Part shown: piece after piece, positions 19,174 through 50,424 of the stretch
How the letters are laid out: each line of letters begins with the position of its first letter
Position numbering within the stretch: the stretch's first letter is position 1
Sequence record: LR756501.1
Direction: 5' to 3' (one strand)
DNA: 64,000 nucleotides
The notes under the pieces: generated by a model
The model's input: the letters and a program-made list of their open reading frames with translations, nothing else
Told to the model about the DNA's origin: nothing
The model's database searches: none
Translations under genes and position numbers: made by a program

Positions 19174-19246
19174 CCCTCGTTAGCTCATTTGGAAGAGTGT
19201 CAGATTCTAGCTCTGACGGTAGTAGGTTCGAATCCTACACGGGGGT
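19174..19246 (+). tRNA. Amber suppressor tRNA (anticodon CUA), copy 1
   Basis: Acceptor CCCTCGT/ACGGGGG, D arm GCTC/GAGT, anticodon arm TCAGA-TTCTAGC-TCTGA (CTA at 19207-09), T arm GTAGG-TTCGAAT-CCTAC. Confidence 0.9.
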
Positions 19247-19251
19247 CAAAA

Positions 19252-19326
19252 CGGATAGTAGCTTAGCCAGGCCAAAAGCATCGGTCTCTAAAACCGATAT
19301 CGAGGGTTCAAATCCCTCCTATCTGA
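19252..19326 (+). tRNA. Amber suppressor tRNA (anticodon CUA), copy 2
   Basis: Acceptor CGGATAG/CTATCTG, D arm GCTT/AAGC, anticodon arm TCGGT-CTCTAAA-ACCGA (CTA at 19288-90), T arm GAGGG-TTCAAAT-CCCTC. Confidence 0.92.
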
Positions 19327-19418
19327 CTAAAAATAATCACCCTGATTATCAACGTCTTCTTACGTTTGCCCCCATTTTAGAAAAAACTAGTAAAAAAGTT
19401 TAATATATACTCAGGTAT

Positions 19419-45165: not shown

Positions 45166-45362
45166 ACTTAAATGAATTAGATCCTTACGGGGAAGAAAAT
45201 TGGTCTGATGAATTACGTCAAGAACCAGATTATAAAGGAATATGTCTTCACCTTGAAGAGTGGGAAAAGAAAGGAATTCCTCATAGTTTATCAGATATGA
45301 TATATTTAGCCAATAAATATAATATTCCCGTTCCAGTTAAAAAAGTAATTAGATATATATGA
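45162..45362 (+). CDS. Small protein with N-terminal DPYGEENW
   Basis: MNLNELDPYGEENW. Confidence 0.7.
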   Translation: MNLNELDPYGEENWSDELRQEPDYKGICLHLEEWEKKGIPHSLSDMIYLANKYNIPVPVKKVIRYI

Positions 45363-45856
45363 AAAATTTAAATATAATAGTGTCCATAGCCAAAAATAGT
45401 TGTATTGGTGGTAACAATACTCTTCTATGGAAACAATCAAACGACCTTAAAAGATTTAAAGAATTAACAACCAATAAAGTTGTTATAATGGGACAAAATA
45501 CCTACGATTCTTTACCTATTAAACCACTACCAAATAGAACCAATATAGTGATCACAGATGATACAGAACAAGTGTTCGAAAATTGTATTACAGCACATTC
45601 AATCGAAGACGCTATTCAGAAATCAATATATCATACTGACGGTGAAGTATTTGTAATAGGTGGTGGATCAATTTATAAACAATTCATGCCTTACGCTAAT
45701 AAACTTTATATTACTAGGATAGATGCTGATATAGAGGGAGATACTTACTTCACAGATATAGATGAGGACGAGTGGACTATAATGTTCAAGGAGCGACACG
45801 AAAAGGACGAAAAGAATCAATATAATTACACTTACGAGATTTACGAAAGAGCATAG
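45359..45856 (+). CDS. folA: Dihydrofolate reductase
   Basis: IGGNNTLLW, DLKRFKELT, VIMGQNT, KPLPNRTNIV, VIGGGSIY, GDTYF. Confidence 0.96.
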   Translation: MKNLNIIVSIAKNSCIGGNNTLLWKQSNDLKRFKELTTNKVVIMGQNTYDSLPIKPLPNRTNIVITDDTEQVFENCITAHSIEDAIQKSIYHTDGEVFVIGGGSIYKQFMPYANKLYITRIDADIEGDTYFTDIDEDEWTIMFKERHEKDEKNQYNYTYEIYERA

Positions 45857-46630
45857 TTAGTATATTTCTTTGTACATTAAAGATGAATCTTCTATGAAAT
45901 TTATAATCTCTTCCATCACTGATCCTCTATTATTTTGATATTTATCATCGCTTATTCTTAGTAATTTAATATTGTTTATATTACAATATTCTTTTAACAA
46001 TCTATCTTTTTCAATTACTTTTTCAAAAGATTTATCTTTTGTTATTATCTTTTTATATAATTTATCATTGAAATGCCATTCACCATCATATTCGATGATT
46101 GTGTTATATTTTTTAATTGTTATATCTACAGCCTTTAATTTATCATCAGATAGTTTAACAATTCTATGTGCGCTTACATTTTCATCACCATAGATTTTTT
46201 TCAAAGTGTTTCTTATTTCTCTTTCGCCTTTACTGGAAAATCTATCGTTTTTCATTCCATTTTTTATGCAGGAGCGAGCGTAAGATTCGTCTTTCCATTT
46301 CTCTTTATTACCATTACTTATTTTAATTAGAGTTTCAATACTATGTTGCCTAGAATTGGCACACCCCCTAGAACAATAATATTTTTCTTTCTCTGGAAAT
46401 CTTTTACTTCTTTCTTTGATTTGAAAGATTTTTCCACAATTTGCACATTTTACATCAAACTCCTGGAAATCGCCAAATTTTTTAATATAAACATTTTTAG
46501 TTGATTGACTCATTGTGTCTTTAAAATCTATATAATATTGATCGTCTTTATGCTTCCATCTCATGTGATTAGCATATAAACCATGATTATCAAATTCTAA
46601 ACCACATATTTTACATTTCAATTCATCCAT
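45857..46630 (-). mobile_element. Free-standing homing-endonuclease-like gene (C2H2 finger, Zn ribbon, Vsr/DUF559-like nuclease)
   Basis: CKICG...H...H, CANC...CSRGC, VDITI...IIEYDGEWH...KDRL...LLRI. Confidence 0.8.
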
Positions 46631-46649
46631 ACCATTATATATAAAAACA

Positions 46650-46714
46650 AAAGGGGGAGAAAATCTTTCGATCTCTCCCCCTTTAAATTAAAACCTCACC
46701 CACTTGGGATGAGG
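46650..46714 (-). terminator. Two tandem hairpins downstream of the tmRNA
   Basis: CCTCATCCCA-AG-TGGGTGAGG-TTT and AAAGGGGGAGA...TCTCCCCCTTT on the minus strand. Confidence 0.7.
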
Positions 46715-46722
46715 AAATTAAG

Positions 46723-47337
46723 TGGACCCGCAGGGATTCGTGAAATACTATTAATTTCTTAATAGACTAGACTATATCATCAACCATTACTGGTTGTTGG
46801 GAGCTTATGTGGTTATTAAGAAGACTATACTTCTCCACTAGTCGTTGAACCTTCATAAAGTGTACTCTATGCTTGGCTGCTGATTGCCATATATCTTACG
46901 ATACTTAGGGTTCCAGCAATTCACCCAATTTTCACATCTATGTTACCATAGAAGTGGTCCGATTTATCAAACCCTGTTCCAACAAAACTTTTAAGAAATG
47001 TACTACAAGTTTATTTGATTTTTCTGAATCAACAAAATATTAAGTTTGATAGATCTAACTTAAAAACCCCGAATCCGTTATGTTTAAGAACTCCCAACGG
47101 AATTTATCAAATGGAGTTTAACTGAATTTTGCTTCGGCTTACGCTAAAACAAGATCTTCGACAAAAGATTCAGTTGCAACTTTGCCTGTCAAAGAAGTTG
47201 GGATACTCATCATATCCTCAGCGTTCATTTTATAGTCGCCATTTATTGTTTACCTACATATTTATTAATCGTATTATAGACATTACGATACTTGCAATTT
47301 CGCTATTACACATTGCTGTCTAAAGCCTGTCGAGCCC
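46723..47337 (-). ncRNA. ssrA: tmRNA (one-piece) interrupted by a group I intron
   Basis: 5' GGGCTCGACAGG; 3' CGGGTCC-A giving G3:U70 and A73 Ala identity; T stem CAGGG/CCCTG; ATAAAT resume context and tag frame 47139..47240 ending VLA*. Confidence 0.92.
46741..46969 (-). mobile_element. Group I intron (229 nt, no ORF) in the tmRNA T-loop
   Basis: P AATTGCTGGAA, Q AATCAGCAGCC, R GTTCAACGACTAG, S ATGATATAGTCT, P9 CTATTAA-GAAA-TTAATAG; P1 GGUU/GACC with U.G at the 5' splice site. Confidence 0.9.
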
Positions 47338-47444
47338 ATATCTTCAAAGAACGTTTTATTGTGAAATTTATATATTGTTTATTTATACCCTGTTTTTTCC
47401 ATTTTGTTTTACAAAGATATAAATAATTTTTCAATTAAAAAAAT

Positions 47445-47663
47445 TTATTCGTTATCAATTTCCTCTACTTCACCGTAAGCTTCATTTACATATTCCATTG
47501 CTTCATCAAATGATTTGAATTCATCGACGTAGTCCCAATCAGTAACGTAGGCTTCTCCACCTTCAAATGGATCGTGCCACACAGTATATGCTTTCTTACC
47601 GTTCTCTTGTATTGATACCCCTTGTTCGGAGTTATTTACCAGTTTATAAATCCAAATCTTCAT
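47445..47663 (-). CDS. Small acidic hypothetical protein
   Basis: ATGA overlap with the YqeY-like gene. Confidence 0.65.
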   Translation of the reverse strand: MKIWIYKLVNNSEQGVSIQENGKKAYTVWHDPFEGGEAYVTDWDYVDEFKSFDEAMEYVNEAYGEVEEIDNE

Positions 47664-48106
47664 GATAACATATTTTTAACAAGTCCACCAACCATTTTCA
47701 TATCAGCCTTACCAAGTAATTCCTTATTAGCAATAGCCATCACTTTACCCATATCACGCACTGATGTAGCACCAACTTGAGCGATGAAATCTTTTACTCT
47801 GAAAGTAACTTCATCTTCTGAAAGTTGTTCGGGTAAATAAGTTTTGTAAACAGTAGCGTTGAACATTTCTTTATCAACCAAGTCAATTCTTCCACCCTGC
47901 GCGTACTGCACAGCGGATTCAGTGCTTTGACTAACTAATTTCTGAATAATTTTAGTAACTTCAGCGTCAGTAAGTTCGTCCTTACCTTCTTTAGCCTTTT
48001 CTACTTGAATAGCAGATTTAATAAGACGAATAGCGTCAAGGGTTTCCTGACGTTTTTCAAGCATTGTTCTCTTGATTTCTAAATCAATAATTTGTTCCAG
48101 TTTCAT
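47660..48106 (-). CDS. GatB/YqeY domain protein
   Basis: IRLIKSAI, QYAQGGRIDL, YLPEQLSEDE, DMGKVM, GKADMK. Confidence 0.92.
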   Translation of the reverse strand: MKLEQIIDLEIKRTMLEKRQETLDAIRLIKSAIQVEKAKEGKDELTDAEVTKIIQKLVSQSTESAVQYAQGGRIDLVDKEMFNATVYKTYLPEQLSEDEVTFRVKDFIAQVGATSVRDMGKVMAIANKELLGKADMKMVGGLVKNMLS

Positions 48107-49938: not shown

Positions 49939-50424
49939 ATGCAATATTTTAAACAAGAAAAAGACTATACTTGTGGTTGTGCCTGCTTCAGAATGGTACT
50001 ATCCGCCCAAGGTTTGTCCGATGTTGACGAGCAAACTCTTGAGGACACTATGGGTACAACCTGGGACTCGGGCACGTCTTACGATAAAATGGTCGCTGCT
50101 GGAGATAAATTTGGTTTAACTACACTTCACGGACAACGAGTTACATTAGATTTTGTTGATCAATTAGCAAAAGGTGGTTGGACAGTTGTACTGGCTTATA
50201 GTCTTGATGTTCCTCATTACTCACTTTTTACTAAACTTGATAGTGGACAAGTGTTCCTTTGTGATCCTCATTTGGGTGAAAAAGTTACATTCCCAACGCA
50301 TAAATTCGAAAGGGCTTTATGGTCAATCGAATTATCAAAGTATAAAAGTGCTATAGCAGATCTTGATTTAAAATTTGACTCAAGTGACGAATCCAAATGT
50401 TGGTACGTTGCTTATAAAAAATAA
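49939..50424 (+). CDS. Papain-like C39 family cysteine peptidase
   Basis: KQEKDYTCGCACFRMVL (Q...C), PHYSL (H), FLCDP (D). Confidence 0.82.
   Translation: MQYFKQEKDYTCGCACFRMVLSAQGLSDVDEQTLEDTMGTTWDSGTSYDKMVAAGDKFGLTTLHGQRVTLDFVDQLAKGGWTVVLAYSLDVPHYSLFTKLDSGQVFLCDPHLGEKVTFPTHKFERALWSIELSKYKSAIADLDLKFDSSDESKCWYVAYKK

What the first reader, a model, noticed from the sequence alone, without database searches (positions are those of the whole stretch)
46741..46969. Group I intron in the T-loop of a phage tmRNA, apparently ending in A instead of omega-G
Seen: 229 nt split the T-loop CAGGG-TT|...|CGAAT-CCCTG. P, Q, R and S core elements, a GAAA-capped P9 and P1 (GGUU/GACC with the U.G pair) are all present. 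P10 (exon CGA with IGS UCG) puts the 3' exon start at CGAAU, so the last intron base is A (...UAUUUCA). The P7 G-C guanosine-binding pair is intact. Established: a group I intron in the tmRNA T-loop was reported in Clostridium botulinum; almost all group I introns end in G, and omega-A variants are rare. Inference: splicing is needed to make an alanylatable tmRNA, so the intron could gate rescue activity. The omega-A implies an unusual second step, an alternative junction or a crippled intron.
Basis: partly seen in the sequence, partly recalled or inferred. Interest (0 to 1): 0.74.

Follow-up and report, generated by a model that had tools for sequence, protein, structure and literature searches.

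The report
Phage tmRNA intron ending in A
A 735-kb phage carries a ribosome-rescue RNA (tmRNA) gene split by a well-formed self-splicing group I intron whose last base is A, not the near-universal G; a second, diverged phage shares the A, so either this ribozyme tolerates a rule-breaking 3' end or the gene is crippled.

Summary
Rfam calls a group I intron (96 bits). Removing 46969..46741 lets ARAGORN call a 387-nt tmRNA with a canonical T-arm, G3:U70 and a 33-aa tag. The junction UU|CGAAU is fixed by P1, a 3-bp P10, intron-less alleles in related phage contigs and one filled/empty pair. This is T-loop "subsite 3", published for bacterial class Bacteroidia, and the phage's predicted host phylum is Bacteroidetes.

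Fifteen distinct related subsite-3 introns all end in G. Only the window and two metagenome contigs end in A. Those contigs come from a phage about 9% diverged in flanking genes, so the A is not a sequencing error. The ribozyme core is intact and the G-binding G-C pair is unchanged, with no compensating change. The tmRNA-intron block differs at 2 of 719 positions between the two phages, against 21% at neighbouring third codon positions.

Best reading (about 0.5): a G-to-A substitution at omega, with splicing still occurring at the canonical junction, probably slowly. The main rival (about 0.3) is a crippled allele recently exchanged between phages. T-loop tmRNA introns are known, and one Coxiella intron is published as lacking omega-G. 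A homing-endonuclease-like gene lies beside the intron.

The parts
46970..47337 (-). tmRNA exon 1: acceptor 5' strand GGGCUCG (47337-47331), body, and 5' half of the T-arm ending CAGGG-UU
   Evidence: ARAGORN on the in-silico spliced sequence; partial Rfam RF00023 match; direct reading
47139..47240 (-). Tag reading frame: resume codon GGC, 33 codons GDYKMNAEDMMSIPTSLTGKVATESFVEDLVLA, stop UAA
   Evidence: ARAGORN coding part 98-199 of the gene; the EDMMSIPTS motif is shared with other phage tmRNAs
46741..46969 (-). Group I intron, 229 nt, no ORF, with a P7.1 extension
   Evidence: Rfam RF00028 96.1 bits; covariation on 8 family members: 96% of cells paired, 34 pairs with compensatory changes
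46956..46973 (-). P1 hairpin GGUU|UGA-UAAA-UCGGACC; internal guide sequence UCGGACC at 46962-46956; splice-site pair U46970.G46959
   Evidence: Rfam alignment places the consensus U.G here; U.G invariant in 8/8
46887..46909 (-). P5 with a CCUAAG...UAUGG motif (the canonical 11-nt GAAA-tetraloop receptor sequence) flanking P5a UAUC-GUAA-GAUA
   Evidence: Direct reading; assignment as receptor for the L9 GAAA loop is inference from established group I architecture
46839..46845 (-). P7 5' strand A-(C bulge)-GACUA; G46843 is the guanosine-binding G
   Evidence: (pair col 143-219 G-C in 8/8)
46769..46774 (-). P7 3' strand UAGUCU; C46770 pairs with G46843
46748..46765 (-). P9 CUAUUAA-GAAA-UUAAUAG; G46748 closes the stem and is not omega
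   Evidence: Compensatory changes at 6 of 7 P9 pairs; closing pair C-G 7/8 and U-G 1/8
46741..46747 (-). 3' tail UAUUUCA; A46741 sits at the omega position, where all 15 relatives have G
46723..46740 (-). tmRNA exon 2: CGAAU (rest of T-loop), CCCUG (T-stem), CGGGUCC (acceptor 3' strand with U70), discriminator A46723; CCA is not encoded
   Evidence: Direct reading; the T-stem covaries across the family
46641..46722 (-). 3' trailer with hairpin CCUCAUCCC-AAGU-GGGUGAGG and a G+C-rich hairpin followed by a U run (terminator-like); identical in the diverged phage
   Evidence: Direct reading; conservation
45857..46630 (-). Free-standing homing-endonuclease-like ORF (257 aa, weak N-terminal zinc-finger match) immediately downstream of the tmRNA gene
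   Evidence: PHROG hits phrog_559 'HNH endonuclease' 1.1e-13, phrog_9084 'homing endonuclease' 2.5e-7, phrog_7140 'intron encoded nuclease' 3.5e-6; homologues beside intron-bearing tmRNAs in L009/L010, L019, L030

Best explanation
This is a subsite-3 (UU|CGAAU) group I intron in the T-loop of a tmRNA gene of the 735-kb Mahaphage. It belongs to an intron family found in Bacteroidota tmRNA genes and, as shown here, in many phage tmRNA genes. In this lineage the terminal guanosine has become A, most simply by one G-to-A transition. Shown: the ribozyme core, P1 with the U.G pair, a 3-bp P10 and the G-binding G-C pair are all intact. Inferred: the first step (attack by free GTP after U46970) should proceed normally. 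Inferred: the second step must use A46741 in a pocket built for G, so exon ligation at GGGUU-CGAAU is expected to be slow or to need help, but it still yields enough mature, alanine-chargeable tmRNA for the gene to stay useful. Splicing would then be a rate-limiting gate on phage tmRNA maturation.
For: Identity and anatomy: Rfam 96 bits and family covariation. Junction: P1 and P10, the canonical T-arm after removal, 13 ARAGORN-called intron-less family alleles reading GGGUUCGA.. at the site, and the filled/empty pair L040 versus L049/L054. The A is real: it is present in LR756501/LR756503 and in L020/L023, which are only 79-96% identical per 150-nt bin in the flanks. Retained function: 67/68 modelled pairs are intact and a perfect GAAA-receptor motif is present. 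The tmRNA plus intron block differs at 2/719 positions, against 3.4% at first and second and 20.9% at third codon positions of five neighbouring genes (P about 5e-9). A vertically inherited dead gene could not stay that similar. Precedent: the title of a J Bacteriol 2007 paper on Coxiella burnetii states that one of two self-splicing introns lacks the canonical omega-G (reference lists in PMC5423948 and PMC11270868).
Against: Omega-G is near-universal. Boundaries with omega-G were found for all 883 intron-form tmRNAs (PMC11915505), and 98.5% of raw calls in the 5,292-intron tRNA survey had U(-1)/G-omega, with the exceptions attributed to C(-1) or errors. All 15 relatives here end in G. From my memory of the Tetrahymena literature (Been and Perrotta 1991; Price and Cech 1988), an A at omega with a G-C pocket blocks or greatly slows exon ligation. 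No compensating change was found: the A-U plus bulged-C variant of P7 also occurs in L025/L029, which keep omega-G, and the other lineage-specific changes lie outside the pocket, one of them creating a UxU mismatch in P3. The near-identity of the block is so extreme, including loops, tag third positions and the 3' trailer, that recent lateral exchange rather than selection could explain it. In that case it says nothing about function. No RNA data were available.
Confidence: 0.5

Rival explanations
1. Crippled allele. The G-to-A change at omega blocks exon ligation, so the precursor is at best cleaved at the 5' splice site and no functional tmRNA is made. The allele is young and occurs in two phage lineages because the roughly 720-nt block was recently moved between them by recombination.
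For: Established group I chemistry requires omega-G in the P7 pocket for step 2 (described in PMC10964413), and omega-G is universal in tmRNA introns. No compensating pocket change was found. There is an extra UxU mismatch in P3 unique to this lineage. The block's 0.28% divergence is about 12 times lower than even first and second codon positions of neighbouring genes, and it covers loops and helices that vary freely among relatives. That fits recent exchange better than ordinary RNA constraint.
Against: It needs an additional event: a dead allele replacing a live one and becoming the consensus in two phage populations. The identical block ends almost exactly at the limits of the transcription unit (15 nt upstream of the 5' end, and the end of the terminator-like hairpin), as expected for selection on the RNA. 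Everything else in the ribozyme and tmRNA is intact. Relatives of this tmRNA are widely kept in phages.
Confidence: 0.3
2. Alternative junction. The ribozyme uses a nearby G as omega, either G46748 at the end of P9 or G46739 inside CGAAU. The mature RNA would then have a non-canonical T-loop of 14 or 5 nt, or UUUGAAU if the 5' site also shifts to after G46968.
For: From memory, model introns with a mutated omega-G can switch to cryptic 3' sites at other G residues. ARAGORN still accepts several of these products as tmRNA.
Against: None of these sites has P10 pairing. G46748 is the conserved closing base of P9 across the family. The products lose the UUCGAAU loop that every intron-less relative has. 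The UUUGAAU option needs a G-C pair instead of U.G at the 5' splice site.
Confidence: 0.08
3. Artefact. The A is a sequencing or assembly error, or a minority variant, and the real base is G.
For: The window derives from a metagenome-assembled genome, and raw reads could not be inspected.
Against: The same A is in two GenBank records and in two separately assembled metagenome contigs. Those contigs belong to a phage about 9% diverged across five flanking genes.
Confidence: 0.02

Closest known systems
Intron-form tmRNA genes, T-loop subsite 3 (class Bacteroidia), in the 2025 tmRNA database (PMC11915505)
   Same: Same host gene, same internucleotide site (after the second loop U), same -1 U in a U.G pair, same guide sequence UCGGACC. 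The bacterial examples recovered here (Marinoscillum, Ekhidna; L031, L032, L036, L037) share the core sequence. The phage's predicted host phylum is Bacteroidetes (PMC7162821).
   Different: The gene here is phage-encoded, with a 33-aa tag instead of GESNYAMAA. The intron is short (229 nt versus about 640) and ends in A, whereas the paper reports omega-G boundaries in every one of 883 sequences.
Clostridium botulinum-type tmRNA intron (T-loop subsite 7, the first one described; cited as ref. 11 in PMC11915505)
   Same: [quoted passage not shown]
   Different: Different subsite (7 versus 3), a mainly Bacillota distribution, and canonical omega-G.
Coxiella burnetii 23S rRNA intron lacking the canonical omega-G (Raghavan et al. 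2007, J Bacteriol 189:6572; only the title was seen, in reference lists)
   Same: A natural bacterial group I intron without a terminal G, described as self-splicing and sitting in an RNA that must be spliced to work.
   Different: Different host gene and organism. The paper was not readable here, so which base replaces G and how well the intron splices rest on my memory, not on a checked source.
Tetrahymena ribozyme with a re-engineered nucleoside pocket (P7 G-C changed to A-U, with omega-A; Been and Perrotta 1991, from memory)
   Same: Shows that a group I intron can ligate exons with a terminal A.
   Different: That case needs the pocket base pair changed to match. Here the pocket pair stays G-C (8/8 in the family), so the rescue seen there does not apply.
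Collaborative (trans) homing: ORF-less intron plus adjacent free-standing homing endonuclease, e.g. cyanophage psbA (reviewed in PMC3984707)
   Same: An ORF-less phage intron with a homing-endonuclease-like gene right next to the interrupted gene, syntenic in several phages. The intron core resembles the S-PM2 psbA intron at about 71% identity.
   Different: The endonuclease's target site is unknown, its nuclease family is unresolved, and no mobility has been shown.

Membership tests
Group I intron (Rfam RF00028) | Conserved catalytic core (P3-P8 with the P3/P7 pseudoknot) scoring above the family threshold | tested here: met
   96.1 bits versus gathering 50; P3, P4, P6, P7, P8 supported by covariation
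Group I intron (Rfam RF00028) | 5' splice site after a U in a U.G wobble pair in P1 | tested here: met
   U46970.G46959; U.G in 8/8 family members
Group I intron (Rfam RF00028) | Guanosine-binding G-C pair in P7 | tested here: met
   G46843-C46770; G-C in 8/8
Group I intron (Rfam RF00028) | Terminal guanosine (omega-G) before the 3' splice site | tested here: not met
   A46741 precedes the only junction that restores UUCGAAU and forms P10; 15/15 relatives have G
Group I intron (Rfam RF00028) | Self-splicing activity | not testable with these tools
   Needs an in vitro splicing assay or RNA sequencing
tmRNA (RF00023 / ARAGORN) | tRNA-Ala-like acceptor stem with G3:U70, and a T-arm | tested here: met
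   GGGCUCG/CGGGUCC with G47335.U46726; T-arm CAGGG-UUCGAAU-CCCUG after in-silico splicing
tmRNA (RF00023 / ARAGORN) | Internal tag reading frame with resume codon and stop, ending in a hydrophobic Ala-rich tail | tested here: met
   33 codons ending LVLA*; homologous tags in 20+ phage contigs
tmRNA (RF00023 / ARAGORN) | Full-length match to the covariance model, including pseudoknots | tested here: inconclusive
   Only 21 bits on the interrupted gene; the spliced sequence could not be given to Rfam
tmRNA (RF00023 / ARAGORN) | SmpB partner available | not tested
   SmpB is reported in huge phages generally (PMC7162821) but was not searched for in this genome
Intron-form tmRNA, subsite 3 (PMC11915505) | Intron between T-loop nucleotides 2 and 3, with -1 U and reconstitution of the loop | tested here: met
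Intron-form tmRNA, subsite 3 (PMC11915505) | Omega-G boundary | tested here: not met
   A46741
Collaborative homing pair | Free-standing homing endonuclease gene next to an ORF-less intron | tested here: met
   PHROG hits down to 1.1e-13 and synteny in four lineages; Pfam and PDB give no nuclease assignment
Collaborative homing pair | The endonuclease cleaves the intron-less allele at or near the intron insertion site | not testable with these tools
   Needs a cleavage assay on GGGTTCGAATCCC-containing DNA

The most novel reading that the evidence does not exclude
A natural group I ribozyme that completes exon ligation with a terminal adenosine in an unaltered G-C guanosine pocket. It would be kept by selection in huge phages as a slow step that times or throttles maturation of a phage-encoded tmRNA, whose long conserved tag (EDMMSIPTS motif) marks stalled host or phage proteins during infection.
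Probability: 0.3. Interest if true: 0.7.

Novelty: new variant of a known kind. Interest (0 to 1): 0.5.

Why it matters
Omega-G is treated as a defining rule of group I splicing and is used by annotation pipelines to place intron boundaries. A well-formed natural intron that breaks the rule in a gene that must be spliced to work gives a clean test case. The question it tests is how much the second step depends on G when P1 and P10 are strong. The intron is only 229 nt, has no ORF, and has 15 G-ending relatives as built-in controls.

It also shows that the largest known phage genome carries a tmRNA that ARAGORN did not call in this window, the tool used in the original study. Intron-interrupted tmRNAs turn out to be common in a family of phage tmRNAs with an unusually long conserved tag. 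If the A merely marks a dead gene, the result is ordinary decay of an accessory phage gene.

Tried and rejected
1. ARAGORN could not pick the junction. It accepts 16 of the 24 junction combinations tried, so it is not discriminating.

3. A compensating change in the G-binding pocket was rejected. The window's A-U plus bulged-C layer under the pocket looked suggestive, but L025/L029 have the same variant with omega-G. Other lineage-specific changes lie outside the pocket.

4. A deletion between CGAAU repeats, suggested by L002's ...CACGAAUAAAACAAAUG|CGAAU, was not supported. The short relatives have tails of about the same length ending in G, so a single G-to-A transition is simpler.

5. Sequencing error was rejected.

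6. G46748 as omega, where the Rfam model ends, was rejected. It is the conserved closing base of P9 and has no P10.

7. L002, L022 and L026 carry the same kind of intron with an antisense LAGLIDADG-like ORF. No tmRNA 5' part was found in L002 or L022 after splicing, and L026 ends inside the intron and could not be spliced. They may be 3' fragments and were not pursued.

8. The nuclease family of the 257-aa ORF could not be assigned from Pfam at E up to 10 or from PDB sequences.

9. The Coxiella omega paper and its follow-ups are not held in the library, so only its title is cited.

10. L011, L013, L016, L017, L018, L033 and L034 appear to be chance matches to the search pattern; L035 was left unresolved (no S element or 3' exon found). 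L008, L021, L024 and L026 are cut by contig ends before the 3' junction.

Full report
**What is there.** The feature lies on the minus strand. Rfam's group I intron model matches 46979..46748(-) at 96.1 bits (gathering score 50, E 1.5e-23). A weak, interrupted tmRNA match covers 46977..47320(-). ARAGORN finds no tmRNA in the raw window. After 46969..46741 is removed, it calls a 387-nt tmRNA with the tag GDYKMNAEDMMSIPTSLTGKVATESFVEDLVLA*.

Reading the strand directly gives these elements:
- The acceptor stem is GGGCUCG/CGGGUCC with the G3:U70 alanine identity pair, and the discriminator is A46723. CCA is not encoded.
- Exon 1 ends CAGGG-UU (46970) and exon 2 starts CGAAU-CCCUG (46740). The spliced T-arm is therefore the canonical CAGGG-UUCGAAU-CCCUG.
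- P1 is GGUU|UGA/UCGGACC, and Rfam places the consensus splice-site U.G on U46970.G46959.
- P10 is CGA/UCG.
- P9 is a 7-bp stem with a GAAA loop, and P5 carries the CCUAAG/UAUGG motif of the canonical GAAA-tetraloop receptor.
- The P7 pair G46843-C46770 is the guanosine-binding pair.
- After P9 come seven bases, UAUUUCA, so the last intron base is A46741.

**Where it comes from.** The region is 100% identical to LR756501.1 and LR756503.1, "uncultured phage" records of 735,411 bp. This is the 735-kb genome of Al-Shayeb et al. 2020, placed in the Mahaphage clade and predicted to replicate in Bacteroidetes (PMC7162821). That study assigned tmRNAs with ARAGORN and never mentions introns. ARAGORN does not call this interrupted gene, so it was probably not annotated.

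[quoted passage not shown] Subsite 3 lies between loop nucleotides 2 and 3, the site used here, and is reported only from class Bacteroidia. The authors state that boundaries with -1 U and omega-G that rebuild the T-loop were found in every case, except for 15 sequences with -1 C. In the companion tRNA survey, 98.5% of the 5,292 raw intron calls had a U(-1)/G-omega pair, and the exceptions were 72 C(-1) introns plus four errors. An intron in a tmRNA T-loop is therefore a known kind. A non-G terminal base is not part of that picture.

**Relatives.** Pattern scans recovered the same intron family in viral, metagenome and genome collections. The sources were:
- Bacteroidota genomes of Marinoscillum and Ekhidna (L031, L032, L036, L037), with the tag GESNYAMAA;
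- huge-phage contigs of 348 and 344 kb (L009 and L010, which match L027 and L028);
- several smaller viral or metagenome contigs (L002, L012, L014, L015/L019, L022, L025, L029, L030, L038, L040).

In all 15 distinct sequences whose 3' junction is present, the base before the T-loop remainder is G. Examples are AUAAAAAAG|CGAAU, AGUAUUG|CGAAU, GGAAUAG|CGAAU and UUAUAG|CGACU.

Thirteen further contigs carry uninterrupted tmRNAs of the same phage family that ARAGORN calls directly, and these read GGGUUCGA.. across the site. L040 (with intron) and L049/L054 (without) are near-identical tmRNAs, and they give an exact filled/empty pair, GGGTT^CGACT. Together with P1 and P10, this fixes the window's junction at UU|CGAAU and places A46741 at omega.

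**The A is real.** Two metagenome contigs, L020 and L023, have the same intron end. They are not the same genome as the window. Flanking sequence is 79-96% identical per 150-nt bin, and the upstream promoter region is replaced. Five neighbouring genes differ at 20.9% of third codon positions and 3.4% of first and second positions. The block 46634..47352 (tmRNA, intron, trailer and terminator-like hairpin) differs at only 2 of 719 positions, one in the tmRNA body and one in the L8 loop. The binomial P is about 5e-9 even at the first-plus-second-position rate. A sequencing error is excluded. A vertically inherited pseudogene is excluded as well.

**State of the ribozyme.** An alignment of eight short family members supports the fold:
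- RNAalifold finds compensatory changes at 33 of 66 predicted pairs.
- With P1, the P7 pseudoknot, P10 and the T-stem added by hand, 96% of cells pair and 34 pairs show changes on both sides. No shuffle out of 500 reaches these values, and slid controls pair only 31-45%.
- The U.G pair, the G-binding G-C pair and the first P10 pair are invariant.

In the window, 67 of 68 modelled pairs are intact. The structure was derived from the window itself, so this count is somewhat favourable to it.

Where the other six aligned members all agree, the A-lineage departs at these intron or tail positions:
- 46955, the base 3' of P1;
- 46933, in J2/3;
- 46802, which turns a P3 U.G into UxU;
- 46791, in P8;
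- two tail bases, 46747 and 46744;
- omega itself, 46741.

One search also lists a difference in exon 1 (46977) and an alignment gap (46967). None of these positions lies in the guanosine pocket. The layer beneath the pocket (A-U plus a bulged C, instead of G-C plus a bulged A) looked like a candidate compensation. It also occurs in L025/L029, which keep omega-G. So there is no detectable compensation, and one G-to-A transition is the simplest history.

**Mechanism.** Shown: an intact core, a canonical 5' splice site, strong P10, a G-specific pocket and A at omega. Inferred: GTP attack at the 5' splice site should be normal. Exon ligation needs the terminal nucleotide in the same pocket (mechanism as summarised in PMC10964413), so an A there should bind poorly. 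From my memory of the Tetrahymena work, a mismatch between omega and the pocket blocks ligation, and ligation returns only when both are changed together.

On the other side, a published Coxiella burnetii paper states in its title that one of two self-splicing 23S rRNA introns "lacks the canonical omegaG" (reference lists in PMC5423948 and PMC11270868). I could not read the paper itself.

The evolutionary evidence leans towards retained function. A dead allele needs an extra, recent transfer between two phages, and the identical block ends almost exactly at the limits of the transcription unit. The identity is nevertheless so complete, including loops and helices that vary freely among relatives, tag third positions and the trailer, that recent exchange may well contribute, and that would weaken the argument.

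My estimates are:
- about 0.5 for slow or assisted splicing at the canonical junction;
- about 0.3 for a crippled, recently exchanged allele;
- about 0.08 for a cryptic junction;
- about 0.02 for an artefact.

**Surroundings.** The 257-aa ORF at 45857..46630(-) lies immediately downstream of the tmRNA gene and matches PHROG families annotated as HNH endonuclease, homing endonuclease and intron-encoded nuclease (E values 1.1e-13 to 3.5e-6). Homologues lie next to the intron-bearing tmRNA in L009/L010, L019 and L030. An ORF-less intron with an adjacent free-standing endonuclease gene is the layout described as collaborative homing in phages (PMC3984707). The endonuclease's target and its nuclease fold remain unknown. 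A YqeY-domain gene lies upstream.

**Verdict.** The intron is a new, phage-borne member of the known subsite-3 tmRNA intron group. Its one exceptional property, a terminal A shared by two diverged phages, departs from the omega-G reported for every intron in the published tmRNA collection, and I know of one published natural precedent elsewhere. Whether the intron splices can be settled by a simple in vitro assay.

Noticed in passing
window 19174-19247 and 19252-19327 (+): Two adjacent tRNA genes with CUA anticodons (amber suppressors; ARAGORN labels them tRNA-Pyl only because of the anticodon). They suggest TAG read-through or recoding in this phage. The tmRNA tag in relative L009 ends at a TAG stop.
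   Followed up: no
window 45857-46630 (-); L009, L010, L019, L030: A free-standing homing-endonuclease-like ORF with a weak N-terminal zinc-finger match sits beside the intron-bearing tmRNA gene in at least four phage lineages (31-47% identity). This layout resembles collaborative homing.
   Followed up: partly
window 47139-47240 (-); L008, L019, L030, L038-L059: A family of phage-encoded tmRNAs with unusually long tags (about 29-34 aa) shares a conserved internal motif, N-x-ED(M/I)MSIPTS(I/L/V)T, and an Ala-rich end. It was found in more than 20 viral contigs, some with and some without the T-loop intron. The motif hints at a specific recognition partner.
   Followed up: partly
window 46634-47352 versus L020/L023: The tmRNA, intron and 3' trailer block is 99.7% identical between two phages whose flanking genes differ by about 9%. 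Immediately upstream (47353-47367) the sequence is replaced by a non-homologous stretch of roughly 240 nt in the other phage. This is either very strong constraint or a recent exchange.
   Followed up: yes
window 46691-46722 (-): A conserved hairpin, CCUCAUCCC-AAGU-GGGUGAGG, lies in the 3' trailer between the tmRNA end and the terminator-like hairpin. Its role is unknown, possibly 3' processing.
   Followed up: no
L002 5175-5856 (+); also L022, L026: The same kind of subsite-3 intron carries a roughly 450-nt insert after P9 holding an antisense ORF with a LAGLIDADG-like FLDTDGS motif. The T-arm and acceptor 3' strand are identical to the window's, but no tmRNA 5' part was found in L002 or L022 (L026 ends inside the intron). 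The loci may be 3' gene fragments, for example attachment-site copies of an integrative element.
   Followed up: partly
L046 and L051 (viral contigs): Two members of the phage tmRNA family read GAGGG-AGUCGGAG-CCCUC or similar in place of the usual T-loop, and ARAGORN does not call them.
   Followed up: no
window 47660-48106 (-), 45359-45856 (+), 49939-50424 (+): Neighbouring genes include a YqeY-domain protein (Pfam 4e-39) just upstream of the tmRNA gene, a dihydrofolate reductase (9e-59) and a C39-family peptidase-like protein (1e-9).
   Followed up: no
L025/L029: This intron-bearing tmRNA has an atypical ARAGORN tag call ending ...TLKYH* rather than an Ala-rich tail. The resume codon may be miscalled, or the tag may be divergent.
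   Followed up: no
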